Positions 20,138 through 41,337 of a stretch of 64,000 bases of DNA are shown here, piece by piece. Made by a program: the position numbers and the translations under genes. The notes beneath the pieces were generated by a model. That model saw only the letters and a list, made by a program, of their open reading frames with translations, did no database searches and was not told the origin of the DNA. The stretch is taken from positions 124,001 to 188,000 of the IMG/VR virus record IMGVR_UViG_3300031857_000002; one strand, written 5' to 3'. Within the stretch, counting starts at the first letter, position 1. Every line of letters begins with the position of its first letter.

Positions 20138-20215
20138 TGGAACACAGGGTGAGATTTGAACTCACGACTTTACGGATTTGCAATCCGTTGCATTTGACCG
20201 CTCTGCCACCTGTGC
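20138..20215 (-). tRNA. tRNA-Cys(GCA)
   Basis: U73 + CCA. Confidence 0.9.
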
Positions 20216-20218
20216 ATA

Positions 20219-20376: not shown

Positions 20377-20459
20377 CATATTGAAACACACTAACTACCT
20401 TGGTATGTACTCAAGTTCATTGAACCGCTACGACCCTATCTTTAATGTGCTTCAATATG
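20377..20459 (-). ncRNA. unassigned stem-capped RNA
   Basis: Terminal stem CATATTGAAGCACA / TGTGTTTCAATATG. Confidence 0.5.
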
Positions 20460-20658
20460 CTCTGCATCCCCCGGCGGTAATTGTAGTACAGAAAGATACG
20501 ACGCTATCGTACCCATCACACGTACCTTCCACCCGCTTCCCGACAGGGACCGTTCTCGCATTGCTAGCGGCCTTTAGGTTCGAAGACTACCACCCGTAGT
20601 TGTCACACTACTTCTCATCCTGTGGGTCACAGTATCCAGAGACTAATCTGGAACGTTC
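20460..20658 (-). ncRNA. unassigned GC-rich structured RNA directly 3' of tRNA-Tyr
   Basis: No credible ORF; hairpins such as TCCAGA/TCTGGA, CTGTG/CACAG, GTAGT/ACTAC, TACGA/TCGTA. Confidence 0.55.
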
Positions 20659-20743
20659 TGGTGGAGATGATAGGGATCGAACCTATCGTGACCGAAGTCG
20701 GAGGAGTTACAGTCCCCTGCCACACCATTGCGGCGGCATCTCC
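20659..20743 (-). tRNA. tRNA-Tyr(GTA)
   Basis: Long variable arm, encoded CCA. Confidence 0.9.
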
Positions 20744-20748
20744 ATGTG

Positions 20749-20823
20749 TGGTACTCGATAGCGGAGTCGAACCGCTCTTGCCTGGATGAAAACCAGATGT
20801 CCTAACCGATAGACGAATCGAGC
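20749..20823 (-). tRNA. tRNA-Glu(TTC)
   Basis: Cloverleaf, encoded CCA. Confidence 0.9.
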
Positions 20824-20831
20824 AAATAAGG

Positions 20832-20896
20832 GAGAGCCACGGTTGCAGGACCTAGTGCTTCGTTACCGAAGGAAGTGTCCAGGCGATGTGACTCTC
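20832..20896 (-). ncRNA. unassigned 65-nt structured RNA
   Basis: Stems GAGAGTCAC/GTGGCTCTC, CCTGG/CTAGG and CTTCG-GTAA-CGAAG (GNRA loop). Confidence 0.55.
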
Positions 20897-20902
20897 AAAA
20901 CT

Positions 20903-20977
20903 TGGCGGTCTGTGGGGGAATCGAACCCCCGTAAGTGGATAGACAATCCACAGTAATAACCTCTATACGAACAGACC
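20903..20977 (-). tRNA. tRNA-Asp(GTC)
   Basis: Cloverleaf, G73 + CCA. Confidence 0.9.
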
Positions 20978-20985
20978 AAAATCTA

Positions 20986-21200
20986 CTATATTAAAAAATA
21001 CTAAAGGAACCATTGTGCATCTATGTCTACCTATAGGACCGTCTCCTATAGACCTGCACGGTCATTACTGCCTACATGCTCCGCCGCTTTTCTGGACATT
21101 TCTGCCCGGTTTCATAGACCTAGCTTGAGCGTGGGCGGCCCCACTGTCCTCGCCTTAGATCCCTAACGGTGTAGGTAACCTTTAATACATTTTAATATAG
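20986..21200 (-). ncRNA. unassigned ~215-nt structured RNA, first element after the tandem promoters
   Basis: ~20-bp AU-rich terminal stem (CTATATTAAAA...TAAAGG / CCTTTA...TTTTAATATAG) enclosing a GC-rich multi-hairpin core. Confidence 0.6.
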
Positions 21201-21233
21201 CAACCCTTGCGGGCTACTACAAGCAAACTTAAC

Positions 21234-21266
21234 TTTTTAAAGAACATCTAGTTAATTTCTAACTAG
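21234..21266 (-). promoter_or_regulatory. boxB-like hairpin plus boxA antitermination signal
   Basis: CTAGTTA-GAAAT-TAACTAG hairpin followed by TGTTCTTTAAAAA (rrn boxA: TGCTCTTTAACA). Confidence 0.65.
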
Positions 21267-21271
21267 TCTCT

Positions 21272-21300
21272 AGTATAACACAATAGCTATATCTAGTCAA
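21272..21300 (-). promoter_or_regulatory. tRNA/ncRNA operon promoter P2
   Basis: TTGACT-N17-TATACT. Confidence 0.75.
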
Positions 21301-21368
21301 CTTGTTTTTGCAAGTCCCTTCATTTTGGAAGGATTCTGCTAAGAACACTTGTTTCTTAACTTGTTTCT

Positions 21369-21397
21369 ATTGTAGCAAATTGCAAATATTGCGTCAA
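21369..21397 (-). promoter_or_regulatory. tRNA/ncRNA operon promoter P1
   Basis: TTGACG-N17-TACAAT. Confidence 0.7.
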
Positions 21398-21405
21398 CCA
21401 CCAAT

Positions 21406-21431
21406 AAAAAACCCGCTTAGTGCGGGTTTTT
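21406..21431. terminator. intrinsic terminator
   Basis: AAAAAACCCGC-TTAGT-GCGGGTTTTT. Confidence 0.85.
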
Positions 21432-21457
21432 ATAAATGTAATACTTTTGTTTACATT

Positions 21458-22357
21458 TTATGCAACGAACGGAGTATACTCAATTCCTGTTGTTGCTAAC
21501 CCTACTAATCCAATTGTGGTTTCAAACGCTGCCAACTCACTTGCGGCTACTAACACATCTGCTTGGCTCAAATTGCTACTGGTCATCCAAGCTGTGTAGT
21601 CAGTGACTTGTGTCAATGTAGCATCTGTACCAAATACGTTTTTGTAAACGTGCTTGATGAATGTTTCATTGCTGACACCACCTGCATCAGTTTTGTAAGC
21701 ATCGGTGGCCAACAATGCTGTGGCTAGTTCTTTGTTTGTCCACCCTGCATCGGCAAGATAGATACCAATGCCTTTGTATGCGTTGGTTACGTCTGTGGTA
21801 CCCAATGCGGCTGCCAACAATGCGTAAACATCACCAGCACGACCTGCGGCATCATAGGCAATGGCCTTGTCTGTGAATACCACACGCTCGTGGTCAGCAA
21901 GATTGAATTCCATGTTGCTGACCAATGTGCTGGCTAAGGTAACTTTAGCGGCAGTTTTGGTTGTGGTGAATTCTGTGCTGGCACCACCCATGGTGTAGGT
22001 GTCAACGCCTGTGGTGCCTGTAACATCCACAACGACATCAACTGTGCCATCACCTGCACGACCTGTGCCCACTACACCAAAGGTGGCAACTTTACCTAGT
22101 GTGCCAACAGTAGCCACTGTAACGATCAAGTTGTTGGCTACTGTACCACCCAATGCTGTTCCAGCAAGAGTGATAGTGTCTCCTGCCACATAGCCGCGAC
22201 CTGCACTTGCGGCAAGACTATCTAATACAACGGAATAAACACCGTTGGTCTTTGTAACATCAAATGCGGCTTCAACACCTGCACCGCCCGTTAACCCTGT
22301 AACGTTTTGGTATGTGGCATTGACTGCTTTGTCTTTGATTGTGATTGTTGTTGTCAT
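21458..22357 (-). CDS. Thr/Ala/Gly-rich S-layer-like protein with C-terminal DUF4214-like domain
   Basis: ERVVFTDKAIAYD, VSNETFIKHVYKNVFG; strongly biased composition. Confidence 0.65.
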   Translation of the reverse strand: MTTTITIKDKAVNATYQNVTGLTGGAGVEAAFDVTKTNGVYSVVLDSLAASAGRGYVAGDTITLAGTALGGTVANNLIVTVATVGTLGKVATFGVVGTGRAGDGTVDVVVDVTGTTGVDTYTMGGASTEFTTTKTAAKVTLASTLVSNMEFNLADHERVVFTDKAIAYDAAGRAGDVYALLAAALGTTDVTNAYKGIGIYLADAGWTNKELATALLATDAYKTDAGGVSNETFIKHVYKNVFGTDATLTQVTDYTAWMTSSNLSQADVLVAASELAAFETTIGLVGLATTGIEYTPFVA

Positions 22358-22485
22358 AATTTTCCTTTAAAATAAAAATGATCTATAAACTTAATTAGTG
22401 GTTTATACTAGTAGTATACATGAATTTTCTAACAAAACTTGTGCGTGTGCGCACATGATTGGTACGAAAGTTTGAAATTATTGCC

Positions 22486-22512
22486 AAAAGAAAACCCGCC
22501 GGAGCGGGTTTT
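22486..22512. terminator. intrinsic terminator ending the tmRNA coding piece
   Basis: AAAACCCGC-CGGA-GCGGGTTTT. Confidence 0.85.
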
Positions 22513-22694
22513 GGTGGTTTCTGTTACGAGGTATTTCCTACCCTAGGCTGCGTTTAGGCTGCCAAAGCGAACTGTTCGTCGTTTGCATTTACGGTTTTTG
22601 TGTCTTCGACCAGGTTACCCCAATCCTAACGGCTTCTACCTTGCCGGACTGTCCATGTTGTTACTCTTGACCCAATCGATCCTGTGTCAGGCCC
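22495..22694 (-). ncRNA. ssrA: two-piece (permuted) tmRNA, coding piece; tag ANDEQFALAA* at 22554..22586
   Basis: 5' GGGCCTG acceptor strand, GGATCGA D-region, GTAAAT-GCA resume context, typical proteolysis tag. Confidence 0.9.
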
Positions 22695-22695
22695 A

Positions 22696-22905
22696 TCATA
22701 ACGATTTTCGTCCCCAATTAATAATGTTCCATACTCTTTCATGAATATAATACAATATTGTATTCACTATTAATTGTGTTATAGCAATAGGTCCTGCAAT
22801 TGATAAGTTACCTGAAATTAACAAGACTATGAGGAATGTTGCACCCGATCCTGTTAATCTCCAACTTATAGTTTTTACAATGCTTCTCAAATTGCTATCG
22901 TTCAT
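22696..22905 (-). CDS. DUF2061-like small membrane protein inside the tmRNA intervening segment
   Basis: RSIVKTISWR...YYIHERVW..I.WG; AAGGA RBS immediately after the tmRNA CCA. Confidence 0.8.
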   Translation of the reverse strand: MNDSNLRSIVKTISWRLTGSGATFLIVLLISGNLSIAGPIAITQLIVNTILYYIHERVWNIINWGRKSL

Positions 22906-22914
22906 AAATCCTTA

Positions 22915-22978
22915 TGGTGGACCTGGCGGGCACTGCCCCCGCGTCTTGAATCCTTTTCTCTCTACTTCATACAGTCTT
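22915..22978 (-). ncRNA. ssrA: two-piece tmRNA, acceptor piece
   Basis: T-arm GCGGG-GGCAGTG-CCCGC; CAGGTCC-A-CCA pairs with GGGCCTG giving G3:U70. Confidence 0.88.
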
Positions 22979-23156
22979 AAACTTGCTCCACTATCTGAAT
23001 ATCCAGTCTTAACGGCTGATCCCAGTTGACCCAGGGTATGGTGCCGGCTTCTCTGGCACTCTCAATATCATCCAATATTTCGGTGACATTGTAGCCAGGC
23101 CCAGGAATGTCTCGTTCCTGCCATAGTTGATTTTGCATTGAGATAGTGATTTTCAT
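22977..23156 (-). CDS. 59-aa hypothetical protein (MKITISMQNQLWQERD...), not in the ORF track
   Basis: Translated by hand; TAAATA upstream. Confidence 0.5.
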   Translation of the reverse strand: MKITISMQNQLWQERDIPGPGYNVTEILDDIESAREAGTIPWVNWDQPLRLDIQIVEQV

Positions 23157-23167
23157 AACGATATTTA

Positions 23168-23722
23168 TTAGTCAACATCAATATCATCGTCTAGCACAAC
23201 CCATCCCAATCGAAACAAATCTTCACGAATTTCATCAGTGATCACGCTTTCAGGCACATAATTTTTTTTAGCTAGAATCTCTGCCTCTATTTCTGGACTA
23301 GATTCACTACCTCCGCCAATTACACCGCCAATGCCTGAACAATACCAATCCATGTAATCACCTTGTACTCGCATGTCTGCAATGATACCGCCAGCATACC
23401 GCCAGCTACAACTCCAGGTTTGATTCTTAAGAGTGGCCCAGACTTCGTTTTTTTGAAAGGTACGATTGCACATGGCCGCATAGAGATTCTGCGAATAGGA
23501 CTTGCTAGAACGAACTTTGGCCAACATGAAATCAGAGGTACGAAGATCGTACTCCATGTTGTTTTGTTGCCATTCGGTATCTTGTTCTTTGGCCATCTTG
23601 TTAATATTTGCTTGTTCAAACATTTTGATGTAGGCTTTATTGAGTTTTTTGCCGTTTTCTGCACATCGTTTGATGTAGTTTTCTTTTTGGAAAGTATTAC
23701 GACTAGGACTACAACTGATCAT
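23168..23722 (-). CDS. hypothetical phage protein
   Basis: GGAG RBS; conserved-looking motifs QNLYAAMCN and SWRYAGG. Confidence 0.65.
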   Translation of the reverse strand: MISCSPSRNTFQKENYIKRCAENGKKLNKAYIKMFEQANINKMAKEQDTEWQQNNMEYDLRTSDFMLAKVRSSKSYSQNLYAAMCNRTFQKNEVWATLKNQTWSCSWRYAGGIIADMRVQGDYMDWYCSGIGGVIGGGSESSPEIEAEILAKKNYVPESVITDEIREDLFRLGWVVLDDDIDVD

Positions 23723-23735
23723 TGTTACTCCAAAA

Positions 23736-23819
23736 TGGTACGAGTAGCCGGAGTCGAACCGGCACGCATTAAGCGGCGGATTTTAAGTCCGCTGGGTCTA
23801 CCGATTCCCCCATACTCGT
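23736..23819 (-). tRNA. tRNA-Leu(TAA)
   Basis: Long variable arm, encoded CCA. Confidence 0.9.
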
Positions 23820-23826
23820 ATGTTGT

Positions 23827-23988
23827 TTATCCGCCTCGGCCAGTGACCTTTTTAACAGGTTTACCCACTGGTGCAGGTGCTGTTGTTTTTTTAACTGACT
23901 TGGAACCTTTGGTAGGTTTTGCATCAGGATGTTGCGCGGCATGTTTTTTCTCTAATGCCGATTTTACTGCTGTGATAAATGAAGCCAT
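23827..23988 (-). CDS. 53-aa Lys-rich basic protein (MASFITAVKSALEKK...KKVTGRGG), not in the ORF track
   Basis: AGGAG RBS; translated by hand. Confidence 0.6.
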   Translation of the reverse strand: MASFITAVKSALEKKHAAQHPDAKPTKGSKSVKKTTAPAPVGKPVKKVTGRGG

Positions 23989-23997
23989 AGTGTTCTC

Positions 23998-24198
23998 CTA
24001 GTACTTGTTATTTAACGCGGCCCAGGTCATCCAGGCACGAAAAGCATTATATACTGTGAGGGCTTCGTTTTCGTCTACAGGAACTTTGACACCACGAACA
24101 TAAAATCCATCTGCAGTGACTCGCAACATTTCATCATCGCTACCTGCATGAAGTATGATTTTGGGTTTGCTATCTGATTGATGTAGCGTGTATGTCAT
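23998..24198 (-). CDS. hypothetical protein
   Basis: AAGGA RBS after the tRNA-Arg CCA. Confidence 0.55.
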   Translation of the reverse strand: MTYTLHQSDSKPKIILHAGSDDEMLRVTADGFYVRGVKVPVDENEALTVYNAFRAWMTWAALNNKY

Positions 24199-24207
24199 AA
24201 TATTCCT

Positions 24208-24282
24208 TGGTCCGGCCACTAGGAATCGAACCTAGATTGATAGCTTAGAAGGCTACTGTATTATCCATTATACTATGGCCAG
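24208..24282 (-). tRNA. tRNA-Arg(TCT)
   Basis: Cloverleaf, encoded CCA. Confidence 0.9.
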
Positions 24283-24288
24283 AGAGTT

Positions 24289-24365
24289 TGGTGCGCCCAC
24301 AAGGACTTGAACCTTGGACCAAAGGATTATGAGTCCTCTGCTCTGACCAACTGAGCTATAGGCGC
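24289..24365 (-). tRNA. tRNA(CAT), probably Ile2 (lysidine)
   Basis: GACTCATAATC anticodon arm and GGTTCAAGTCC T-arm resemble bacterial Ile2. Confidence 0.8.
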
Positions 24366-29429: not shown

Positions 29430-29715
29430 TGGGGAACACTTGCGCCCCTTGCGTTAACAGTACCACACTAAATTTGTCTGTTTTAAACTGCGTGTTGAGT
29501 TTGCGAGCCAAGTTGATTGCGTGGCCAGGATTTGAAAAACTGACCTTTTTGTACTTGGGTCCAGGATACTGTGTCAGCATGTTGCTGGTCTTTAGGTTGA
29601 TAGGTTTTGAGTCATAGAACACAGCCCACACTCCTTCCGACGCTAGCACTTGCTCGGTCTTGTAAGTTTGTTTGTTTGTGTGCTCTATTAACACACTGGG
29701 TTTAGGTCTGCTCAT
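29419..29715 (-). CDS. hypothetical phage protein
   Basis: MSRPKP...GPKYKKVSFSNPGHA; AGGAG RBS and TAAATA upstream. Confidence 0.7.
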   Translation of the reverse strand: MSRPKPSVLIEHTNKQTYKTEQVLASEGVWAVFYDSKPINLKTSNMLTQYPGPKYKKVSFSNPGHAINLARKLNTQFKTDKFSVVLLTQGAQVFPNAQ

Positions 29716-32446: not shown

Positions 32447-33092
32447 AGACTTGTCGTTGGTTCATGTAATCAACTAAGGTCTGTGCCCAGGCGGCATGCG
32501 CATCTTCATTGTAGTGTTGCCAGCCAGGTGTGATTTCTTCAAACTCATGTTCCACACAGTAGTTGATATAGCAAAGATTTTGCTGGTAAGGATGGAAAAA
32601 GCATTCGTCCCAGTCCAGTTGTTCGGCTGTGTTAGCAACCTGGAACGCATTGAACGCATTGAAAAACAAGTGCGGAATGCCACGCTCTTTGAGAATCAAG
32701 TGCAGGTTATAGATCTTGTTGTGCCAGTAGTAGCCCATCACACGATGCCACTCGCCTTCTTTCTGAATGTGATTTTTCCAGAACTGATATCGTCGGCGAA
32801 ACTCTTCAGGAATACGCTGACCAACATCCAACTGATTGATCTCGTGGAAAGCACCTTCAAAATACCATTGCTCACGACCATGCTCAGTCCACCCAATCAC
32901 CACAAGGTCCGGCTTGTTATCTTTAAGATACTCAAGTGTGGAATTGTAGATCAAGTCGTTGCTAGCACCACTCACTGATAGGTTAGTGCCTGTTCCGCCA
33001 AGATGTCTTGATATCTCACCAATCATGCTACGGCTGCGGTCTTGCAACTCCTCGCCATTCATGTTGGAGTCACCGTTAAACAGTATGTTCAT
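32424..33092 (-). CDS. SGNH/GDSL-like protein (tandem paralog)
   Basis: NGDSN, SGASN, HYNEDAH. Confidence 0.6.
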   Translation of the reverse strand: MNILFNGDSNMNGEELQDRSRSMIGEISRHLGGTGTNLSVSGASNDLIYNSTLEYLKDNKPDLVVIGWTEHGREQWYFEGAFHEINQLDVGQRIPEEFRRRYQFWKNHIQKEGEWHRVMGYYWHNKIYNLHLILKERGIPHLFFNAFNAFQVANTAEQLDWDECFFHPYQQNLCYINYCVEHEFEEITPGWQHYNEDAHAAWAQTLVDYMNQRQVYDSICKR

Positions 33093-33561
33093 TTTTAAGT
33101 ACCTTTAGAGTTTCAGCATGTGCCACACGCTTACGCAGGCTTGAGCTAGAGAAAGAGTGATCTCGACCATTGAATACTAGTTCAATTCCACGCTCACTAC
33201 CTTCCCATCTTCCAGTAAACTCTTTGTCAGCATATTCTACTCCTAGAATTCGAACGTCCAATGGTAGAATTAGCAAGAGGTCAATAAGGTCTTGTTCAGT
33301 TTGGTACACCACAACTTCGTCCACATAGCGACAGGCTGCAAGTTGAATCTGTCGTTCTACAATACTTTGTATAGGTTTGTTCTTGGTATCAGGTCTATCA
33401 ATTGTGGGATCAGTTTGTAGTCCACAGATCAAGTAATCGCAGTGATTTTTAGCTTCGCTTAACATGGCAACATGGCCAGCATGCAACATGTCAAAGGTTG
33501 AGAATGTGATGCCGATCTTTTTGCCTTGTGCTTTTAGTTCTTTGATGTGATTGAAAATCAT
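33076..33561 (-). CDS. cytidylyltransferase-family protein (TagD-like)
   Basis: STFDMLHAGH (HxGH), YVDEV, R.H.FSSS. Confidence 0.8.
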   Translation of the reverse strand: MIFNHIKELKAQGKKIGITFSTFDMLHAGHVAMLSEAKNHCDYLICGLQTDPTIDRPDTKNKPIQSIVERQIQLAACRYVDEVVVYQTEQDLIDLLLILPLDVRILGVEYADKEFTGRWEGSERGIELVFNGRDHSFSSSSLRKRVAHAETLKVLKNEHTV

Positions 33562-33953
33562 GACACTTCACTCCTGCCGTTGCCAATGTCTTTACTCTGC
33601 ACCCAGATACCCGAGTTCTTGATCGCTTGCTCTTGTTCCCAAGTTTCCATAACAACGTGCCTGCACACATTCTGAAACCACTGGTCCACAATGTCTGCAT
33701 CTACTTTGCCTTGGTAGCCGGCCTTGATCAATCTAGCAACAAAGATATCATTCCAGTCTAGTTCAAACGCACCTTGATGTAGATTATTAAGATCCACATC
33801 CATGCCCAGCACAGCCACATACGGCTCGCCAGCTTCAGTAGCCAATTGCTTGGCTGTTTTTTCAGGAGCCTTGACTTTGGGAGTAGATGGCGTCTTGGCT
33901 TCTACAGGCTTTGCTTCCTTCTTGGGCTTTAAGAATCTATCAAACAAGCCCAT
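33558..33953 (-). CDS. hypothetical phage protein
   Basis: GEPYV..FELDWN..IVDQWF. Confidence 0.65.
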   Translation of the reverse strand: MGLFDRFLKPKKEAKPVEAKTPSTPKVKAPEKTAKQLATEAGEPYVAVLGMDVDLNNLHQGAFELDWNDIFVARLIKAGYQGKVDADIVDQWFQNVCRHVVMETWEQEQAIKNSGIWVQSKDIGNGRSEVS

Positions 33954-34798
33954 TATTTGCCCCAGCCATTGCCCCAAAGATCAACGTGTAATCTTGGGCT
34001 ATACCAGTAACCACGCTTGAGTGCTTCGTCTGCAACATTAATACGATTGCCATCGTACACACTGACAACACCACCTACGGGCATTACAAACACAGGACCT
34101 GCAAACTGTGCGAGTCTATATTCATCCACTGCACGATCCAGCTCGTCAAAGTCTTGAACTTTCTCAACCACAAACTTGAGATAAGTTATGCCATATGTTT
34201 CGAGATCAAAAATAATCTCTGGCTTGATTGCCTCTTCCCACTTCTCGCCCGACACACTTAGCTTGGGACTTACTGAGAATGTGATCTCACCGTGCCAGTT
34301 GCTCAGGTACAGTTTGAAGTCTCTTGATAGTTCTTGAGTACCATTGGTCTCAAATGTAATGTGACGCAGGCCACGTTCATGCAGTTTGTCCAGCAATGCA
34401 GGATACGCACGTTGCCACCCCAACAAAGGCTCACCGCCTGTGATAACCAAGTGTACAGGATTGCCATTGGGTTGTTGCCAGTTACCGTTGGGCAATAGTG
34501 CTGCCATCTTTTCCACTAGTTCATCTTCTGTGTAGGTAGGGCTGAGTTCTTTAAATGCAGGATGCCATGACGCATAGCTGTCACAGCCTGTGCTAACAAG
34601 AGGCAGCTCTTCAAATGTCTTGTAGAGATGCACACTCTTGGCAACTTCATCTGCTTCCAACGATGCCTCGCCTGGCTTGCAACCAAACCCCGAGCAGGTA
34701 AAGTTGCAACCAAACATGCGAAGGAACACGCTGGGAACACCAACGTAACGACCTTCGCCTTGTGCTGAATAGAATAGTTCTGATACTTTAAATTTCAT
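33953..34798 (-). CDS. queE: 7-carboxy-7-deazaguanine synthase (radical SAM)
   Basis: ELFYSAQGEG..GVPSVFLR..GCN, CDS, TGGEP, ETNGT, SPKL, RLH. Confidence 0.9.
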   Translation of the reverse strand: MKFKVSELFYSAQGEGRYVGVPSVFLRMFGCNFTCSGFGCKPGEASLEADEVAKSVHLYKTFEELPLVSTGCDSYASWHPAFKELSPTYTEDELVEKMAALLPNGNWQQPNGNPVHLVITGGEPLLGWQRAYPALLDKLHERGLRHITFETNGTQELSRDFKLYLSNWHGEITFSVSPKLSVSGEKWEEAIKPEIIFDLETYGITYLKFVVEKVQDFDELDRAVDEYRLAQFAGPVFVMPVGGVVSVYDGNRINVADEALKRGYWYSPRLHVDLWGNGWGK

Positions 34799-35463
34799 AA
34801 TCTTGTTACCTTTGTCATTCCTGTACGGTTAGGATCTTTATTTAGATTGATACTCTGCTCGTGCATTATAACACGAGTGTTTTGTTTTGTCACCCATCCC
34901 GGCAACACAACATCTAAATAGGCTAAATGCTCTGCAGGCGTAGGATGCGGATCTTGTCGATCAGGCCACCCTTCGGGATGCAATACCTTTTGGTAGCTGG
35001 GCAGAACACTATCAATTACATCTTGATACAAATCAATCACGTCTGAGTCACCGTCAAAGTTTGCCATGCTCATGAATTTCCATCTGATGTTGCGATGTTC
35101 TAGCAATGTTTTTATTGATTTAATATATGCTAGGTCTCTTATAAGGTACCCACGAGAGTCAACATGTGTTGTAAGATACTCTTTATCATAGATAGGACAA
35201 GTAAACATGTTGCCTAGCGTGTGCCATCTACCTTGTGCATATCGATCATCTCTGTGTACTGTAGTCCAACAAACAACTACAGTATCATTTGGACCAAATT
35301 GTGTTCGCTGATCGGCCTCTATAATACTGTTAAAGATGTAGCTGTTGCCAGCACCACTTTGTCCCCAATTTTCAACTGTGTCAAACTCAGGTTCTAAACA
35401 GTCAACCCAGGTACTCCAACGATAGTTAGTAAAACTACATCCAAATGCAAACAGTCTACTCAA
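34795..35463 (-). CDS. SGNH-like protein
   Basis: FGCSFT, GAGN, DPHPTPAEH. Confidence 0.55.
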   Translation of the reverse strand: MSRLFAFGCSFTNYRWSTWVDCLEPEFDTVENWGQSGAGNSYIFNSIIEADQRTQFGPNDTVVVCWTTVHRDDRYAQGRWHTLGNMFTCPIYDKEYLTTHVDSRGYLIRDLAYIKSIKTLLEHRNIRWKFMSMANFDGDSDVIDLYQDVIDSVLPSYQKVLHPEGWPDRQDPHPTPAEHLAYLDVVLPGWVTKQNTRVIMHEQSINLNKDPNRTGMTKVTRL

Positions 35464-36248
35464 ATTTTTCTTGCTTTAACTAACAAATGCCAGCCCAGAT
35501 ATTCTCTCACAGCCTGTCGATGTGACTCTGTCATGGCTTCAAACCAAGGTTCTAACTCGTAACGGCCTTCTTTGTACGCATCTACATTATACATAAAGCA
35601 ATGATCCTGACGGAGGCGTTCGATGTACCAGCCGTTGTCGCTGTTCATCAATTGGTGGATTTCATCTTTGCTGAATGCCTGTGCGTATGGACACCCTGCT
35701 TGTGCTTCAAATTGGTCAAGACCCTTTTGAATCATGGCATACTTCCAGGAGTTCTTGGCGTATACCATGTATCGGAATTCGCCACCATGCTTGACCACCT
35801 CATGTACATTGTCAATGATTTTGTCAATGCCTGGAAAGTGATGGATTACACCATAACTGTACACAAGATCAAACTCACCTAGTTTGGCAAGTGCTACTCC
35901 ATCAGTTGCATCTACATTGTAGAACTCGCCTTCAAGGCCTAGTGTTTCGAATCGTTGCTTGCTTAGTGCAATACTTTGATCGCTGAGATCAATGCCCACA
36001 TACTCAGCACCGTGTTTGGCAAACTCTTCGGCATCCGAACCAATCCCGCAGCCAATTTCCAACACACGTTTACCAGCCCACAAGTGAAACCCCGCAAACT
36101 CAGCAATGTGCGGCTCTACACGATAACGACGTTCGCTTACTTCTCGAAAGAACTCGGGTGTGCCTATGTCGCTTTGACCGTGCTTGATGTTGCACGGCTG
36201 TGTGTTCCAGTAGCGTTTAATACGCTCTTCAAGACTTAGTTGTTGCAT
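35460..36248 (-). CDS. class I SAM-dependent methyltransferase
   Basis: VLEIGCGIG, GIDLS, FDLVYSYGVIHH. Confidence 0.85.
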   Translation of the reverse strand: MQQLSLEERIKRYWNTQPCNIKHGQSDIGTPEFFREVSERRYRVEPHIAEFAGFHLWAGKRVLEIGCGIGSDAEEFAKHGAEYVGIDLSDQSIALSKQRFETLGLEGEFYNVDATDGVALAKLGEFDLVYSYGVIHHFPGIDKIIDNVHEVVKHGGEFRYMVYAKNSWKYAMIQKGLDQFEAQAGCPYAQAFSKDEIHQLMNSDNGWYIERLRQDHCFMYNVDAYKEGRYELEPWFEAMTESHRQAVREYLGWHLLVKARKI

Positions 36249-37116
36249 TTTGTTTTTCTGCTTCCTGTTGACGTGCCTTTTCAGCAAAGTGGCTGTGAGG
36301 ATTTTTAAACTGCACCATTTGTTTGTTGACATCATTCAATGCCAACTTTTCCCAAGGATCTTGTGTGCCACGGAAGATGTTGGCAAAGAAACTCATATCT
36401 TGACCAAGTTCTGTTTCAAGATACTGTGCTATTTTTGCACAGTCTGTGTGACGAACATCCATTTGCTGTACACTGTGAAAGTCTCGGGGATCTCGGGGAT
36501 TGCCTTCTAACATGGGACGATTTTGGAATGTTTCGTCTCCATTGTTGCCTGTAAGGTCATGGCGGTCATGCAATACATTAACTGGAATACGTTCCCAGAT
36601 GTCCAGCATGTAAGCCTGTTGACTTAACCATGCATCAGAGATTTGATGCGGGCTCAAGTATCCCAACAAGTCCAACCACTTGCGAGGCACAATAGGGAAG
36701 ATACTATAAGGATGATCATTGTGTGTATGAAAGGCCAACAGCTTGAACTCACCTTCGTGAATCATGATCTCTTGATCCCAGGCACCTGTTTCCATCACAG
36801 CATCATCGTTCCAGAATACCAACCAACGGGCATCACTTTTGCGAGCTAGTTCATTCACATATTCATTGAGACGAATGTATCCTAGTGGATTGAACGTCAT
36901 AGCAGTGTAGTTTACCTTGTGTTCGTCCAACCAAGGCTGTAGCTCATCAACGAAACATTGTGTGCCCACATCATCGTCGTTGTCAAACCCAAACATGATT
37001 TGAATACGACTTGGGTCAGCCGCTAGTTCAATCACGCTTTTTACACTGCGTTCCAGTGAGTCTGATCGCCCACGAGTGGGCAACAAGATTGCAATATCAA
37101 ATTCAGGTGTTGTCAT
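36229..37116 (-). CDS. GT2 (GT-A) glycosyltransferase
   Basis: ILLPTRGR, FDNDD, WNDD. Confidence 0.75.
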   Translation of the reverse strand: MTTPEFDIAILLPTRGRSDSLERSVKSVIELAADPSRIQIMFGFDNDDDVGTQCFVDELQPWLDEHKVNYTAMTFNPLGYIRLNEYVNELARKSDARWLVFWNDDAVMETGAWDQEIMIHEGEFKLLAFHTHNDHPYSIFPIVPRKWLDLLGYLSPHQISDAWLSQQAYMLDIWERIPVNVLHDRHDLTGNNGDETFQNRPMLEGNPRDPRDFHSVQQMDVRHTDCAKIAQYLETELGQDMSFFANIFRGTQDPWEKLALNDVNKQMVQFKNPHSHFAEKARQQEAEKQNATTKS

Positions 37117-37667
37117 TCAAATAAATCCTCATTCCATTCTCTGTGGCCTTCTCTAAACGCCATGTTTGCTTGTGTTTCACGTACTTCCACTCGGTAGCAC
37201 CACAGGCGTTGTGCTTCGCCCTCGCCCCAAAAGTCTGGAATGTAAACACCGTTCACATACTTGTACAGCATGTCAGCAAGTGATTCACATCCTACTCTGG
37301 GCAAGATTGTAAGTTTGGCCAGTTTGCGACGTTCCATCTCTTTGTAAAATTCAAGTTCAGGATCATCGGCGCTGACCAGGGTTGTGTGATCAAATTGATC
37401 TTCTAAAATTTTCTTGAGTTCTTTCAAGCCGCCATAGTCAGCGGCCCAGTTGCGAACATCAAGGTCGTTTGTACCAAAGTAAAACTTCATTGAGAAACTG
37501 TAACCATGATTCAAGTTACAATGACTGTCGGCCCTCCATTGACGATAAGCACAAGGAAATGCGTCAATGTACTCTTTGGTACTGGTAAACTTGTATTGAA
37601 CAGGTCCGCGATATGGAAGGTTTTGCTCCATGTGTTTAATTAGATCCTGAGTTGATGATAGTGCCAT
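37113..37667 (-). CDS. queD: 6-carboxy-5,6,7,8-tetrahydropterin synthase
   Basis: SHCNLNHGY, DYGGLK, QFDH, GCE, VRET. Confidence 0.85.
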   Translation of the reverse strand: MALSSTQDLIKHMEQNLPYRGPVQYKFTSTKEYIDAFPCAYRQWRADSHCNLNHGYSFSMKFYFGTNDLDVRNWAADYGGLKELKKILEDQFDHTTLVSADDPELEFYKEMERRKLAKLTILPRVGCESLADMLYKYVNGVYIPDFWGEGEAQRLWCYRVEVRETQANMAFREGHREWNEDLFE

Positions 37668-37674
37668 TATTATT

Positions 37675-37745
37675 CTCCTATGTTAAATGTTAGCATAGGC
37701 TTGCAGAATTTATATAGCGGGATGAATGCTCTAAAGGCCGCTGAG
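37675..37745 (-). promoter_or_regulatory. candidate preQ1-I-like riboswitch in the queD leader
   Basis: P1 AGCGG/CCGCU, A-rich tail, loop-tail pseudoknot, RBS-sequestering hairpin. Confidence 0.45.
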
Positions 37746-37753
37746 ATCATTAC

Positions 37754-38155
37754 TTATGCTGGCTTTGTGTAACCACTAGCTTTATAGTTGGCCTGTCCGT
37801 GGATCACGCCTCGAACACCGCCAATGGGATTGGCACAATCTCCTACCCGTCGTGGAATCAAGTGTATGTGTGGATACATCACAGTTTGACCTGCTGCCTC
37901 GCCGCAGTTGATACCCACGTTGTAGGCTTCCCACTCGCCGGTTACCACTTTGTGATGACCAAAACGGAAAGCATACTTCAAGGCTTCTTCGATAATTTCA
38001 TTCTTGTTCCACCGTGGCACAAACAACAAATGTCCCTTGGCCACTGGGTAAGCATCACGGAACACAGCCACATGATAGTCTGAATGCTCTGTGGCCTCAT
38101 CTGACCATGGTGCGGCACCTGCTGCCGCTGCCTCTTCTAGTGTTTCATATCTCAT
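37754..38155 (-). CDS. HIT-family hydrolase
   Basis: DAYPVAKGH, AAGQTV..PHIHLIPR. Confidence 0.9.
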   Translation of the reverse strand: MRYETLEEAAAAGAAPWSDEATEHSDYHVAVFRDAYPVAKGHLLFVPRWNKNEIIEEALKYAFRFGHHKVVTGEWEAYNVGINCGEAAGQTVMYPHIHLIPRRVGDCANPIGGVRGVIHGQANYKASGYTKPA

Positions 38156-38964
38156 CTTGGGGCAAACTCCTGTTGTAATTTAATGTTGTCAAAAAACTCT
38201 TTCTTCACAGACGGATCAGTCTTAAAAGCACCTTTGAGCACTGTGGTCTGTGTGAGACTAGAGTGTGCCATAATGCCGCGATTCTCACAACATCCATGTG
38301 TGGCCTGAATGTACACTGCTACGTTTTCGGAGTCAGTAGCTTTACTAATCTCACGGGCAATGTCGTTACAAAGTTCCTCCTGGAGAGTTCCTCGTCTAGC
38401 GCACCATTGAGCGATTCGGGTATACTTACTAAGACCAATAAGTGTATTGGCAGCAATAATGCCAATATAAGCAACGCCAGCCACAGGTTGGTGATGATGG
38501 CTACACATACTGCGCAACTCACTACGTACAACCAACATACCCTCATAACGATCCGCCGAATCATTTGGAAACGCTGTGGCGTCAGGTCCTGGTTCATATC
38601 TACCCTCCATAATTTCATTGAAGTACATTTTAGCAAGTCGTCTTGCTGTGCCATGCGAGTTTGGATCTGTTTCTCGATCAATTAGCAAGCGGTCAAGCAC
38701 CAGTTCAAACGCTTCAGTTGCTTCATCTATAAGGGTATGTTTCATCTCTTCCGAAACATAATCACTAATGTTGTCGCCTGCCCAAAAACGTTTGTTATCA
38801 CGTTTCATCTTGGTACGAATGGCATCTGCTAGATACCCTTCTTTGTAGCCCTTGTCGCTCATGTCCTTGCCGGCTTTTTCAATTGCGCTTTGATGGGCAT
38901 GGGGGATAAATGTGTTTTTTGAATCCGTATGTATAACAGGATCTGGAATAAAGTCTTTTGTCAA
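38152..38964 (-). CDS. folE: GTP cyclohydrolase I
   Basis: SMCSHH, GLSKYTR, LQE, HGCCENRG. Confidence 0.92.
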   Translation of the reverse strand: MTKDFIPDPVIHTDSKNTFIPHAHQSAIEKAGKDMSDKGYKEGYLADAIRTKMKRDNKRFWAGDNISDYVSEEMKHTLIDEATEAFELVLDRLLIDRETDPNSHGTARRLAKMYFNEIMEGRYEPGPDATAFPNDSADRYEGMLVVRSELRSMCSHHHQPVAGVAYIGIIAANTLIGLSKYTRIAQWCARRGTLQEELCNDIAREISKATDSENVAVYIQATHGCCENRGIMAHSSLTQTTVLKGAFKTDPSVKKEFFDNIKLQQEFAPR

Positions 38965-39003
38965 TTTAGTTCTCCGAGTTAATGACGTGGATGTCTTTGT
39001 GCT

Positions 39004-39032
39004 ATTGTATTGTATTTAGATCGCTGTGTCAA
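39004..39032 (-). promoter_or_regulatory. promoter of folE-HIT-queD
   Basis: TTGACA-N17-TACAAT; spacer contains TAAATA. Confidence 0.7.
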
Positions 39033-39036
39033 CTGT

Positions 39037-39810
39037 TTAGAAAATTTTACTAACAAAATTTTTTTCTAGTAGACAAGGAATTAAAATTTCTTGGGTCCAT
39101 TGACAATGACATTCAGGGGTAGGATGACTGTCATTTGGTATCCATTGGTTTGTTGTTCTCATAAAGTTGCCTAATGTAAGTTCATCTTCAATGTCAAAGT
39201 ATTGAGTAACTTTTTTAGTCAGTGGTGTTTGTATTAGATCAAATTCCCAGTTTGGGTAGTAAAAATTTGTAAACACATACGAGAAGTTTTTTTCAATAAG
39301 ATATGATCGAAGTGCTAGTATTTTAAGAATGCTCTCGTATACCTGTGCTGTAGGTGATACCACTCGTTTATAAATTTTACATAAATCTTCTTGTAACTTT
39401 CCACGCCGTGATTCCAATGGCTGGTTGAAAATACTTAATGTTGAAAAAGTGTTATCAAAATTATAGTTTGATGACCAATGATAATCTTTGGTCATGTCTG
39501 TGGTGGCAATAACGTCAGTTCTTTGCAGCGAGCTCCACATGATAACCACCAGCGTCGATTCACTGTTGATGTTTTCGTTGAGTTCAATCTCATTGATAAT
39601 GCTGTTAAAAATATGATTTGTTCCGGCACCTGATTGAGACGTATCGTATACTTCTTCAAACCCGCAAAGATCTCTAAGATAGTATGGCCAGGTCTGTTGT
39701 TCATTATTGTCGGGATTAAAAGTAAAACTGCAACCGCCAACAAGTACATTTTTAAATCTCGATAGGTGAGTAGCCGGCAGATGTCTACTAATATTTCTGG
39801 TATGACTCAT
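39037..39810 (-). CDS. SGNH-like protein (AT-rich)
   Basis: GGCSFT, SGAGT, DSHPTPECH. Confidence 0.55.
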   Translation of the reverse strand: MSHTRNISRHLPATHLSRFKNVLVGGCSFTFNPDNNEQQTWPYYLRDLCGFEEVYDTSQSGAGTNHIFNSIINEIELNENINSESTLVVIMWSSLQRTDVIATTDMTKDYHWSSNYNFDNTFSTLSIFNQPLESRRGKLQEDLCKIYKRVVSPTAQVYESILKILALRSYLIEKNFSYVFTNFYYPNWEFDLIQTPLTKKVTQYFDIEDELTLGNFMRTTNQWIPNDSHPTPECHCQWTQEILIPCLLEKNFVSKIF

Positions 39811-40400
39811 ATGATAGTTATTTTTCTGCAATCTGGATAATCAACATGTATTGGCTTTGGCCGATTTACCTTCACCCCTTCTAGCAAGGCAAGTCCTTGA
39901 ATGGCTTCTTCGATGGTGGGTTTGTAGTGGTAACCAACTCGGAACACCTGTTGTGATTCCCATGGCTTGATGGTTAAATCTCTGCCGTCGTAGCGTTGAG
40001 CCAACATGGTATCGTATGCTTCGACATCATCTAACAAGATGGCACCACCACGCCCGATATGTAATGGCTTGCCATGGCCAAAACTCAAACAGGTCAATGT
40101 ATCTGGACGATACATATCTTGTTCGAGTCTGCGAGCACTATCCCAAATGCGAGTTTCAAGTATGGGATATTCGCCAACCCAACGTTGCCAGGCATGATCA
40201 AGATATTCATACTCAATGCCCAACTTGTGCATGGTCATTGGTATACTTAAATACGTGTAAGGTTGCATCTTGCAGTGTTTGACCTGATCATATCGCAAAC
40301 ACAGCTCAATGGCATGAGTACAGCAATCAGTCATGATTGCATATGGTGCACCGGTAAACTCTGCTAGAGCTCGTTCAAACTGCAGGATTTTATCGAACAT
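39807..40400 (-). CDS. short DegT/DnrJ/EryC1/StrS-family PLP aminotransferase
   Basis: FERALAEFTGA, CTHAIEL, DSA, SFGHGKPL..GRGG. Confidence 0.75.
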   Translation of the reverse strand: MFDKILQFERALAEFTGAPYAIMTDCCTHAIELCLRYDQVKHCKMQPYTYLSIPMTMHKLGIEYEYLDHAWQRWVGEYPILETRIWDSARRLEQDMYRPDTLTCLSFGHGKPLHIGRGGAILLDDVEAYDTMLAQRYDGRDLTIKPWESQQVFRVGYHYKPTIEEAIQGLALLEGVKVNRPKPIHVDYPDCRKITII

Positions 40401-41337
40401 ACCATTTCCAGGCATGAGTGATCATGTCGTCTAGCGTGTACTTTTGCCAGTCTTTGTATACTTGTCCAAACTTGTCTGCGCTAGCAGTTAACACAGCCGG
40501 ATCGCCAACACGCTTGTTGCCAACTACTACTTTTAACTGACGTCCTGTAATGCGTGTGGCTGCCTTGATAATCTCTGCATTGCTAGTGCCTTGGTTGGTT
40601 CCAAGATTGTACACACCGGGCGCAAGATTATCGTACAACGCACTCACGTGCGCATCGGCAATGTCTTGTACGTGAACATAATCACGTACACAGGTACCAT
40701 CTTCGGTGGCATAGTCAGTGCCATACAATGTAAATGGGGTGTTGTCTCGCAAACTTTCTAGTACTCGAGCAATAATATGTGTAGCACCTGGCTCTTGTCC
40801 ATGTCGAGCTTGCATGTCTGCACCACACGCATTAAAGTATCGGAATGCCACGTAGTCTAAGTTGTATGCTTTATGATAACTTTCCAACATCATCTCAACC
40901 ATGAGCTTGCTTTCTCCGTAAGGACTAACAGGCTCAGTGGGATCAACTTCGTGACAAGGAGGCATAATTGGTTCACCATACACAGCCGCTGAGGAACTGA
41001 AAATAAATCTAACTTTAGGCAAGGCCTGCACAATAAAGTTCAGCAAGTTCATGGTCTTGGCCACGTTGTTACCGTAGTATTCTGATGGCTTCTTGATGCT
41101 AGGACCAACCAAGCTAGTACCTGCACAATGCACAATGGCGTTGGGCTGGGTGTCTAACAATTTCTTGTAGGCAATATCGCTGTCAAAGTCGGCTTGAAGA
41201 AAGTTATCAAGTTGTCCTACTTGATGCTTTTGCAAAGGTCTACGGTCAATACCTATAACAGTATGTCCTGCGCCTTTTAACTGCAAGGCAATTTGTCCGC
41301 CAATGTAGCCGGCGACGCCTGTGACTATTACATTCAT
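40390..41337 (-). CDS. galE: UDP-glucose 4-epimerase
   Basis: TGVAGYIG, SSSAAVYG, YGESK, RYFNACG, DGTCVRDYVHV. Confidence 0.9.
   Translation of the reverse strand: MNVIVTGVAGYIGGQIALQLKGAGHTVIGIDRRPLQKHQVGQLDNFLQADFDSDIAYKKLLDTQPNAIVHCAGTSLVGPSIKKPSEYYGNNVAKTMNLLNFIVQALPKVRFIFSSSAAVYGEPIMPPCHEVDPTEPVSPYGESKLMVEMMLESYHKAYNLDYVAFRYFNACGADMQARHGQEPGATHIIARVLESLRDNTPFTLYGTDYATEDGTCVRDYVHVQDIADAHVSALYDNLAPGVYNLGTNQGTSNAEIIKAATRITGRQLKVVVGNKRVGDPAVLTASADKFGQVYKDWQKYTLDDMITHAWKWYVR

What the first reader, a model, noticed from the sequence alone, without database searches (positions are those of the whole stretch)
37668..37750. preQ1-I-like pseudoknot with an RBS-sequestering platform upstream of queD
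Seen in sequence (RNA): AGCGG-CCUUUAGAGCAUUCAUC-CCGCU-AUAUAAAUUCUGC. This is a 5-bp P1 with an A-rich tail, and loop UAGAG can pair with tail UUCUG, matching preQ1-I topology although the loop is longer. It is followed by CCUAUG...CAUAGG, which hides the AGGAG RBS; loop AGCAU can alternatively pair with AUGCU in that hairpin. Inference: a phage riboswitch. With no QueC/QueF in view, the ligand may be CDG, 7-deazaguanine or another pathway intermediate rather than preQ1.
Basis: partly seen in the sequence, partly recalled or inferred. Interest (0 to 1): 0.68.

Follow-up and report, generated by a model that had tools for sequence, protein, structure and literature searches.

The report
Phage queD pseudoknot riboswitch candidate
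A 45-base RNA pseudoknot just upstream of a large phage's queD gene is kept, with compensating mutations, in hundreds of related uncultured phages; it looks like a new relative of the preQ1-I riboswitch, probably one that turns translation on, and its ligand is unknown.

Summary
Alone it proves nothing. It folds no better than shuffles, and Rfam finds nothing even at E<=10.

Comparison settles it. The same leader sits directly 5' of QueD in about 150 IMG/VR loci, 4 MAG contigs and 76 of 76 assessable metagenome contigs.

The real P2 joins loop GCAUUCA to tail UGCAAGCC, and 6 of its 8 pairs covary.

The architecture resembles preQ1-I: an H-type pseudoknot, an invariant C before the P1 3' strand, and an A-rich L3. 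It fails the Rfam preQ1-I model, has a much longer P2 and L1, and has a separate expression platform.

In all three platform types the far end of the P2 3' strand is shared with a helix that hides the Shine-Dalgarno sequence or the AUG. Ligand-stabilised P2 should therefore open the ribosome site, making this an ON switch, unlike known preQ1 switches.

The phages have FolE, QueD and QueE but no recognisable QueC or TGT/DpdA, so the ligand is open. This is a real, apparently undescribed riboswitch candidate.

The parts
37738..37742 (-). P1 5' strand (AGCGG)
   Evidence: Pairs with 37716-37720. 98.9% paired in 88 variants. Variants include ACCGG/CCGGU, UGCGG/CCGCA, AGAGG/CCUCU, AGUGG/CCACU and AUCGG/CCGAU.
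37731..37737 (-). L1 (CCUUUAG); the C at 37736 and U at 37735 are invariant
   Evidence: C and U are present in 88 of 88 variants. The rest of L1 varies in length, roughly 3-9 nt.
37723..37730 (-). P2 5' strand (AGCAUUCA) inside the P1 loop
   Evidence: Pairs with 37698-37705. 6 of 8 pairs covary. The A-U pair next to L2 becomes G-C in 12 variants with none unpaired. The U.C mismatch (37725 with 37703) is invariant.
37721..37722 (-). L2 (UC); C37721 is the invariant unpaired C directly 5' of the P1 3' strand
   Evidence: C in 88 of 88. L2 is UC in 62, AC in 9, CC in 7, and UUC or CUC in 10. This is the same position as the specificity C of preQ1-I (review PMC11625349).
37716..37720 (-). P1 3' strand (CCGCU)
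   Evidence: See the P1 5' strand.
37706..37715 (-). L3, the A-rich tail (AUAUAAAUUC)
   Evidence: Always 10 nt. A37713, A37711, A37709, U37707 and C37706 are invariant in 88 variants.
37698..37705 (-). P2 3' strand (UGCAAGCC); its last two C (37699-37698) are also the first two bases of the anti-Shine-Dalgarno arm
   Evidence: Covariation with 37723-37730. The overlap with CCUAUG is read directly from the sequence.
37677..37699 (-). Type A expression-platform hairpin: CCUAUG, an 11-nt loop, then CAUAGG, covering AGG of the AGGAG Shine-Dalgarno (37675-37679)
   Evidence: Both arms are invariant in the type A leaders (79 scored; sequences listed). The Shine-Dalgarno sequence is predicted unpaired with median probability 0.36 when the P2 3' strand is free and 0.82 when it is engaged.
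37690..37695 (-). UGCUAA, which can pair with the start region AUGGCA (37662-37667)
   Evidence: In relatives UGCUAU pairs with AUGGCA. Where codon 2 differs, UAUGCU pairs with AGCAUG. Compensated forms are UGAUAU/AUGUCA (two lineages) and UAUGUU/AACAUG. Its role is unresolved.
37113..37667 (-). Regulated gene: QueD-like 6-pyruvoyl-tetrahydropterin synthase family protein (184 aa)
   Evidence: Pfam PTPS 1.7e-14. PHROG QueD-like 3.2e-35. NCBIfam QueD reaches only 32.5 bits against a cut-off of 89.
37754..38155 (-). Upstream HIT-domain ORF (133 aa); its stop codon lies 12 nt before P1
   Evidence: Pfam HIT 9e-10.
38152..38964 (-). GTP cyclohydrolase I (FolE), first gene of the likely transcript
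   Evidence: Pfam 1e-38. A promoter-like site, TTGACA-17-TACAAT, lies at 39032-39004.

Best explanation
Window 37742-37698 (minus strand) encodes a 45-nt H-type RNA pseudoknot in the queD leader.

**Structure (shown by covariation)**
- A 5-bp P1.
- An 8-bp P2 (7-10 bp in relatives) formed between the P1 loop and the 3' tail.
- A 10-nt A-rich L3.
- An invariant unpaired C at the P1/P2 junction.

**Interpretation (inferred)**
- It is most likely the aptamer of a metabolite-sensing riboswitch built like preQ1-I.
- The ligand would sit between P1 and P2 and pair with the invariant C.
- The ligand is probably a compound with a guanine-like edge: a 7-deazaguanine such as preQ0, preQ1 or CDG; a pterin intermediate such as dihydroneopterin triphosphate; or guanine.

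**Mechanism (inferred from sequence overlap, compensated changes in the start-codon helices and folding calculations)**
- Control is at translation initiation.
- The far end of the P2 3' strand is shared with a helix that hides the ribosome site.
- In type A, as in the window, that helix is CCUAUG:CAUAGG over the Shine-Dalgarno sequence.
- In types B and C, UGYC... pairs with ...GGCA over the start codon.
- Ligand-stabilised P2 and the sequestering helix therefore exclude each other, so ligand should switch queD translation ON.
For: **Conservation and linkage to QueD**
- The element is found 5' of QueD in 76 of 80 loci of one QueD clade and 74 of 80 of a second clade that is about 57% identical.
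- It is also in 4 MAG contigs.
- In a metagenome pattern scan that did not ask for QueD, 75 of 80 hits have QueD downstream, 4 are too short to judge and 1 has a truncated QueD.
- A 524-kb phage carries two motif+QueD modules in different neighbourhoods.
- There is only one instance per genome otherwise.

**Structure**
- P1 is 98.9% paired and 3 of 5 pairs are compensatory. In P2, 6 of 8 pairs are compensatory. Covariation is 0.359 against 0.122 in shuffles and at most 0.10 when partners are slid.
- The same result holds on a structure-blind MAFFT alignment.
- G.U pairs in P2 fit only the queD-sense strand.
- Sixteen positions are invariant in 88 variants; eight of them lie outside canonical pairs (six in the loops plus the U.C mismatch in P2).

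**preQ1-I likeness**
- UC or AC before the P1 3' strand, a G-C pair on top of P1, and an A-rich L3.
- A sub-threshold RF00522 alignment in the same register in relative L061.

**Switch**
- The shared nucleotides are read from the sequence.
- The start-codon helices show compensated changes.
- The cost of unfolding the ribosome site falls when the aptamer is engaged: 7.6 to 4.4 kcal/mol in type A (75 of 79 leaders), 10.2 to 5.0 in type C (4 of 4), and 9.1 to 7.4 in type B (16 of 27).
- There is no terminator in the region.
Against: - No ligand has been tested.
- Rfam's preQ1 models do not recognise the window or most relatives.
- The window's own P2 is weak: 5 Watson-Crick pairs of 8.
- An ON switch on a biosynthetic gene is unusual. 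All known preQ1 switches are OFF.
- In type A, a second conserved helix (UGCUAU with AUGGCA) could hide the AUG once the Shine-Dalgarno hairpin opens, so the direction is less secure there.
- The type A loop reads TGCTATAAT, an extended -10 look-alike, so part of the platform's conservation might be promoter-related.
- Pseudoknot energies were not modelled. The bound state was imitated by blocking nucleotides.
Confidence: 0.68

Rival explanations
1. It is an ordinary, if divergent, member of the preQ1-I class. It binds preQ1 (or preQ0) and switches queD OFF as feedback on the first committed step of the pathway.
For: - Same topology, the same position of the invariant C, UC/AC before the P1 3' strand, an A-rich L3, and association with a queuosine-pathway gene.
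- A weak RF00522 alignment in the correct register in L061: 12.8 bits, E = 1.6.
- QueD is the first committed step after FolE, where end-product feedback would be expected (established pathway knowledge).
Against: - The window, L059 and 7 other instances give no RF00522 hit at E<=10. The best score is far below the threshold of 39 bits.
- P2 is 7-10 bp rather than 3-4, L1 is roughly 3-9 nt, and L3 carries three extra invariant or near-invariant nucleotides (YUC).
- The Shine-Dalgarno sequence is not part of P2.
- Overlaps in all three platform types predict ON, not OFF.
- The phages lack recognisable QueC, and the one genome searched for QueF shows none in the window region examined, so preQ1 is not obviously their product.
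Confidence: 0.12
2. It is a structured translational operator or enhancer without a small-molecule ligand. Either a protein (QueD itself or a phage translational regulator) recognises it, or it is a fixed fold that sets the basal translation rate of queD.
For: - Covariation proves structure, not ligand binding.
- Phages use protein-RNA translational repression (established knowledge).
- Strict co-inheritance with QueD, including the duplicated module in G003, would also fit autoregulation.
Against: - The invariant nucleotides sit in loops and at the helix junction, in the pattern of a small ligand pocket known from preQ1-I.
- Alternative, mutually exclusive helices are conserved in three different platform designs, as expected for a switch.
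- No candidate RNA-binding protein is co-conserved. The upstream neighbours differ: HIT, a radical SAM enzyme, ClpP, or an unknown ORF.
Confidence: 0.16
3. The conservation is at the DNA level: a promoter and operator for queD, with P1 and the CCTATG...CATAGG repeat serving as protein-binding palindromes.
For: - -10-like boxes lie 7-10 nt upstream of P1 in many relatives.
- TGCTATAAT lies in the type A loop.
Against: - P2 is not a palindrome. It is a pseudoknot pairing with compensatory changes and G.U pairs that are meaningful only in RNA of one strand.
- The spacing between the CCTATG and CATAGG arms varies from 6 to 11 nt.
- P1 covaries while its sequence changes, which a sequence-specific DNA-binding protein would not tolerate.
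Confidence: 0.03
4. It is a chance arrangement of short hairpins in an AT-rich intergenic spacer.
For: The single-sequence fold is no more stable than shuffles, and there is no Rfam hit.
Against: Hundreds of homologous copies with compensatory substitutions, invariant loop residues and strict placement before QueD.
Confidence: 0.01

Closest known systems
preQ1-I riboswitch (Rfam RF00522; types I-III)
   Same: - H-type pseudoknot with a 5-bp P1 topped by a G-C pair.
- An invariant unpaired C directly 5' of the P1 3' strand, preceded mostly by U or A.
- An A-rich L3 beginning AUA.
- Association with a queuosine/7-deazaguanine pathway gene.
- Translational control.
   Different: - It fails the Rfam model.
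- P2 is 7-10 bp with an invariant U.C mismatch, against 3-4 bp.
- L1 is roughly 3-9 nt and carries an invariant CU, instead of a UU or UC directly on top of P1.
- L2 is only 2-3 nt.
- L3 has an extra YUC.
- The Shine-Dalgarno sequence lies outside P2, in a separate platform.
- The predicted direction is ON.
- So far it is found only in large uncultured phages.
preQ1-II (RF01054) and preQ1-III (RF02680) riboswitches
   Same: Pseudoknotted leaders of queuosine-related genes that act on Shine-Dalgarno accessibility.
   Different: - They have a different (HLout) topology and are much larger.
- The only Rfam signal here, preQ1-II at 17.7-18.1 bits, aligns just the model's flanks (a promoter-like UAUGCUAUA and AGGAGAAAAUAUG), with the 69-nt core deleted.
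THF-II riboswitch (folE motif)
   Same: A small leader RNA in the GTP cyclohydrolase/pterin neighbourhood whose ligand has a guanine-like edge (own knowledge, not tested here).
   Different: - It is a hairpin with an internal loop rather than an H-type pseudoknot.
- No Rfam family matches the window, even at E<=10.
- The element here precedes queD, not folE.
Translational ON purine riboswitches (for example the Vibrio vulnificus add adenine riboswitch)
   Same: The proposed logic: a strand of an aptamer helix doubles as part of the anti-Shine-Dalgarno or anti-start helix, so ligand binding frees the ribosome site (own knowledge).
   Different: An unrelated fold (a three-way junction), and a different ligand and gene context.

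Membership tests
preQ1-I riboswitch (RF00522) | H-type pseudoknot: the P1 hairpin loop pairs with the 3' tail | tested here: met
   P1 and P2 are both supported by compensatory changes in 88 variants and on a structure-blind alignment.
preQ1-I riboswitch (RF00522) | Specificity C directly before the P1 3' strand, preceded by U (type I) or A (types II and III) | tested here: met
   C in 88 of 88. Preceded by U in 72, A in 9 and C in 7. The feature is as described in PMC11625349.
preQ1-I riboswitch (RF00522) | A-rich L3 lying in the P1 minor groove | tested here: inconclusive
   L3 is a fixed 10 nt with three invariant and one near-invariant A, interrupted by pyrimidines and ending in an invariant UC. 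Groove contacts cannot be tested in silico.
preQ1-I riboswitch (RF00522) | Conserved U or UU directly on top of the P1 5' strand (L1) | tested here: not met
   The first L1 base varies (U 38, C 38, A 12). The invariant bases are the next two, C and U.
preQ1-I riboswitch (RF00522) | Score at or above the Rfam gathering threshold (39 bits) | tested here: not met
   No hit at E<=10 for the window, for L059 or for 7 genome instances. L061 reaches 12.8 bits, E = 1.6.
preQ1-I riboswitch (RF00522) | Short P2 (3-4 bp) that contains the first Shine-Dalgarno bases, or a terminator; an OFF switch | tested here: not met
   P2 is 7-10 bp. The Shine-Dalgarno sequence lies 19 nt or more downstream in a separate hairpin. 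The overlaps predict ON. There is no terminator.
preQ1-I riboswitch (RF00522) | Binds preQ1 or preQ0 selectively | not testable with these tools
   Needs in-line probing, ITC or reporters.
Riboswitch (general) | A conserved aptamer, a variable expression platform with mutually exclusive pairings, and a consistent gene association | tested here: met
   One aptamer with three platform designs (A, B, C). All share nucleotides with P2 and all precede QueD.
preQ1-II / preQ1-III | Match to the family covariance model across the aptamer core | tested here: not met
   Only flank-only preQ1-II alignments with the core deleted. No preQ1-III hit.

The most novel reading that the evidence does not exclude
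This is a new riboswitch class or subclass confined to large uncultured phages. It reuses the preQ1-I pseudoknot scaffold but works as a translational ON switch. Its ligand is not preQ1 but a precursor or intermediate with a guanine-like edge, for example FolE's product dihydroneopterin triphosphate, CDG, or guanine. QueD, the first committed step of a non-canonical 7-deazapurine or pterin pathway (no QueC, no DpdA), would then be made only when substrate is available or at the right time in infection.
Probability: 0.3. Interest if true: 0.9.

Novelty: new variant of a known kind. Interest (0 to 1): 0.78.

Why it matters
- Few riboswitch classes are known from phages. None is reported for the phage 7-deazaguanine gene clusters in the papers searched; the phage 7-deazaguanine papers do not mention riboswitches at all.
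- This is an abundant, well-supported RNA, with hundreds of copies and roughly 90 distinct aptamer sequences. It looks like preQ1-I rebuilt with a long P2 and an opposite, ON-type platform.
- It would show how a minimal aptamer scaffold is re-wired. It could also reveal a new ligand specificity.
- It gives a handle on an uncharacterised FolE-HIT-QueD-glycosyltransferase-methyltransferase-QueE pathway in large uncultured phages (contigs of 228-525 kb) that lack QueC and DpdA.
- The aptamer is only 36-47 nt long, so binding tests are cheap and would be decisive.

Tried and rejected
- **Rfam at gathering thresholds** over the whole window: only tRNAs and a tmRNA.
- **Rfam at E<=10** on the region and on nine relatives: one sub-threshold preQ1-I alignment, plus flank-only preQ1-II alignments, which I take as promoter and Shine-Dalgarno look-alikes.
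- **Single-sequence folding**: not informative.
rejected.
neither supported nor excluded. The AUGCU segment shows better evidence for pairing with the start-codon region.
- **Extra copies in the genome that would define a regulon**: none. Two weak covariance-model hits are only a small hairpin followed by UUUAAAAAUUCU.
- **Cultured phages**: no aptamer in 50,697 records by blastn, and none in the QueD regions of Rhizobium phage RHph_X3_2 or Sinorhizobium phage Phosso.
- **Bacterial and archaeal genomes**: the pattern hits only 4 MAG contigs that look like phage DNA, plus one chance match in a Desulfobacteraceae contig.
- **Transcription attenuation**: no terminator-like site in 36900-39200.
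- **DpdA search with phage-specific models**: not done. Only Pfam TGT was used, and it may miss divergent DpdA.
- **The large protein searches, structure prediction and complex prediction** were not needed.

Full report
**What is in the window.** All genes here run on the minus strand. The finding lies in the 86-nt gap (37753-37668) between a 133-aa HIT-domain ORF (37754-38155) and a 184-aa PTPS/QueD-like ORF (37113-37667). GTP cyclohydrolase I (FolE, 38152-38964) sits just upstream.

The RNA reads, 5' to 3':
- AGCGG (37742-37738)
- a 17-nt loop
- CCGCU (37720-37716)
- AUAUAAAUUC
- UGCAAGCC
- then CCUAUG, an 11-nt loop and CAUAGG, overlapping the AGGAG Shine-Dalgarno sequence
- then AUG at 37667

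**The single sequence proves nothing.**
- It folds no better than shuffles: -14.6 against -17.4 +/- 2.9 kcal/mol, z = +0.96. The MFE does not even use P1.
- Rfam 15 finds nothing here at gathering thresholds or at E<=10 on 37500-37900.

**Comparison decides it.**
- The window is part of a 320-kb IMG/VR virus record, 92% complete by CheckV.
- QueD has at least 593 close relatives in IMG/VR. I fetched 80.
- In many of them, the only part of a 221-nt query that still aligns at the DNA level is the leader itself.
- MAFFT shows obvious compensating changes.
- A covariance model finds the element once per locus, directly 5' of QueD, in 76 of 80 loci.
- It finds it in 74 of 80 loci of a second QueD clade, only about 57% identical. 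There the upstream neighbour is a radical SAM enzyme or ClpP instead of HIT.
- A DNA pattern for the aptamer, not conditioned on QueD, hit 5 genome contigs. Four are real, all before QueD, in MAGs labelled Haliscomenobacter, Chitinophagales or Bacteroidetes. One is a chance match.
- The same pattern hit more than 120 metagenome contigs. Of the 80 returned, 75 have QueD downstream, 4 end too soon, and 1 has a QueD cut after 22 residues.
- One 524-kb phage has two motif+QueD modules in unrelated neighbourhoods.
- No cultured phage has the element, and no second copy exists in the window's genome.

**Structure.**
- On a structure-blind alignment of 37 distinct aptamers, P1 is 100% paired and 3 of 5 pairs change on both sides.
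- On 88 distinct aptamers aligned to a model, P1 is 98.9% paired. Pair 2 is G-C in 68, C-G in 15 and U-A in 3.
- The true P2 pairs the 3' half of the loop (window 37730-37723) with the tail (37705-37698). It is anchored at its inner end and is 7 to 10 bp long.
- Six of its 8 modelled pairs covary. Examples are GGUG/CACC, GGCG/CGCC, GGGC/GUCC, GACGC/GCGUGUC, and ACGNCAUUCA/UGCAUGUCGU.
- The innermost A-U pair becomes G-C in 12 variants with none unpaired. A U.C mismatch is invariant.
- The whole-structure covariation score is 0.359. Shuffles give 0.122 +/- 0.009 (0 of 500 reach it), and sliding the partners gives 0.03-0.10.
- G.U pairs fit only the queD-sense strand.
- Sixteen positions are invariant in all 88 variants. 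Besides G-C pairs at the top of P1 and base of P2, they include a CU in L1, the unpaired C before the P1 3' strand, three A and a UC in L3, and the U.C mismatch inside P2.

**What it resembles.**
- The 2024 review of the preQ1 family (PMC11625349) defines preQ1-I as follows:
  - an H-type pseudoknot
  - a specificity C directly before the P1 3' strand, preceded by U (type I) or A (types II and III)
  - a G-C pair on top of P1
  - an A-rich L3 in the P1 minor groove
  - the ligand stacked between P1 and P2
- The phage element has all the features that can be read from sequence. L2 is UC in 62, AC in 9 and CC in 7 variants.
- In one relative with a short loop (L061), RF00522 aligns in exactly this register, but at 12.8 bits against a threshold of 39. 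This is not significant on its own.
- Nine other instances give nothing.
- Differences: a long P2, a long L1 carrying invariant CU rather than UU, a 2-3-nt L2, three extra L3 bases, and a Shine-Dalgarno sequence that is not part of P2.
- I therefore describe it as working like preQ1-I, not as a member.

**Expression platform and direction.** Three designs follow the same aptamer.
- *Type A* (the window; 79 leaders scored). P2 ends in CC. These two C begin CCUAUG, which pairs with CAUAGG and covers AGG of the Shine-Dalgarno sequence.
- *Type B.* The distal P2 bases UGUC continue as UGUCRUC, which pairs with GAUGGCA across the start codon.
- *Type C.* UGYCAUUG pairs with CAAUGGCA.
- Between B and C, the bases before the AUG and their partners change together.
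- In every design, a formed P2 and the sequestering helix compete for the same bases.
- I imitated the bound state by blocking the aptamer nucleotides:
  - In type A the Shine-Dalgarno sequence opens, from median unpaired probability 0.36 to 0.82, in 78 of 78 leaders.
  - In types B and C the AUG opens, from 0.01 to 0.36 and from 0.00 to 0.41.
  - The cost of unfolding positions -15 to +13 drops from 7.6 to 4.4 kcal/mol (A), 9.1 to 7.4 (B) and 10.2 to 5.0 (C).
- No terminator is present.
- The inferred direction is ON. This is an inference: pseudoknot energies were not modelled.
- Type A also has a further conserved helix whose role I cannot place. UGCUAU pairs with AUGGCA, or UAUGCU with AGCAUG, with compensated UGAUAU/AUGUCA in two lineages.

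**Ligand.** It is unknown.
- The cluster encodes FolE, HIT, QueD-like, a family-2 glycosyltransferase, a SAM methyltransferase, an unknown ORF, a QueE-like radical SAM enzyme and a cytidylyltransferase-like protein, next to sugar-nucleotide enzymes.
- Pfam QueC and TGT (the DpdA superfamily) find nothing convincing in this genome or in five related near-complete genomes. These phages therefore do not run the canonical preQ0/DpdA DNA-modification route.
- QueD is the first committed step after FolE.
- An ON switch fits a substrate or timing signal (dihydroneopterin triphosphate, guanine or GTP-derived) at least as well as an end product. A 7-deazaguanine remains the simplest guess from the fold.
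- All of this paragraph beyond the gene calls is inference.

**Novelty.**
- Five full-text literature searches found no description of a queD-associated pseudoknot or of any riboswitch in phage 7-deazaguanine clusters.
- Rfam 15 has no model that recognises it.
- I rate it a new variant of a known kind: real, abundant and cheap to test.

**Limits.**
- Habitat is inferred only from contig names, such as a TBL hypolimnion label and 'marine metagenome' titles.
- The host is unknown.

Noticed in passing
window 12698-24365 (minus strand): An array of 26 tRNA genes includes all four queuosine-substrate tRNAs: His-GUG, Asn-GUU, Tyr-GUA and Asp-GUC. A permuted (two-piece) tmRNA lies at 22463-23007 with tag peptide ANDEQFALAA.
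   Followed up: partly
window 33076-41337 (minus strand); G000-G005: The gene cluster reads: epimerase/dehydratase, DegT-like, FolE, HIT, QueD-like, GT2, SAM-methyltransferase, unknown, QueE-like rSAM, cytidylyltransferase-like. No QueC or TGT/DpdA is detectable in six related phage genomes. This suggests an uncharacterised 7-deazapurine or pterin pathway.
   Followed up: partly
type A platform loop, e.g. L094:4381-4434 (minus strand) and downstream; window 37693-37683 is a degenerate form: The loop of the Shine-Dalgarno-sequestering hairpin reads TGCTATAAT in most relatives, a perfect extended -10 look-alike. The flanks of Rfam's preQ1-II model align to it. It may be a second promoter inside the platform, or an RNA-level constraint.
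   Followed up: partly
G003 (record behind L164): 29502-29553 and 500079-500129; L186: A 524-kb phage contig carries two aptamer+QueD modules. The second lies between an APS-kinase-like/nucleotidyltransferase ORF and a PsiE-family ORF.
   Followed up: yes
L127:2281-3480, L128, L110; L240; L156:2521-3480: QueD is interrupted or displaced in some relatives.
- In L127, L128 and L110 a 196-aa ORF with no Pfam match sits behind a duplicated QueD start (MAKKY, then a stop).
- In L240 QueD is cut after 22 residues.
- In L156 a DenV-like pyrimidine-dimer glycosylase ORF sits between the aptamer and QueD.

   Followed up: partly
L114:1438-1465, L126:2310-2337, L131:2310-2337, L159:2022-2049: An extra partial copy of the aptamer (P1 plus loop only, 29 bits) lies about 620 nt upstream of the complete one.
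   Followed up: no
window 58279-58315 (minus strand); G000:75009-75043: Weak covariance-model hits consist of a small GC hairpin followed by UUUAAAAAUUCU. They share the L3-like tail but lack the loop and P2. This may be a recurrent phage signal of another kind.
   Followed up: no
L094, L096, L097, L098 (MAG contigs): Contigs binned as Haliscomenobacter (two), Chitinophagales and 'Bacteroidetes' carry the phage-type module. They are probably phage DNA inside bins. The strong AGGAG Shine-Dalgarno sequences and the tmRNA type argue against taking this as host evidence.
   Followed up: partly
window 39004-39032 (minus strand): A near-consensus sigma-70-like promoter (TTGACA, 17 nt, TACAAT) lies upstream of folE. 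In the window the aptamer is therefore probably intercistronic, on a folE-HIT-queD transcript. In many relatives a -10-like box sits 7-10 nt before P1 instead.
   Followed up: partly
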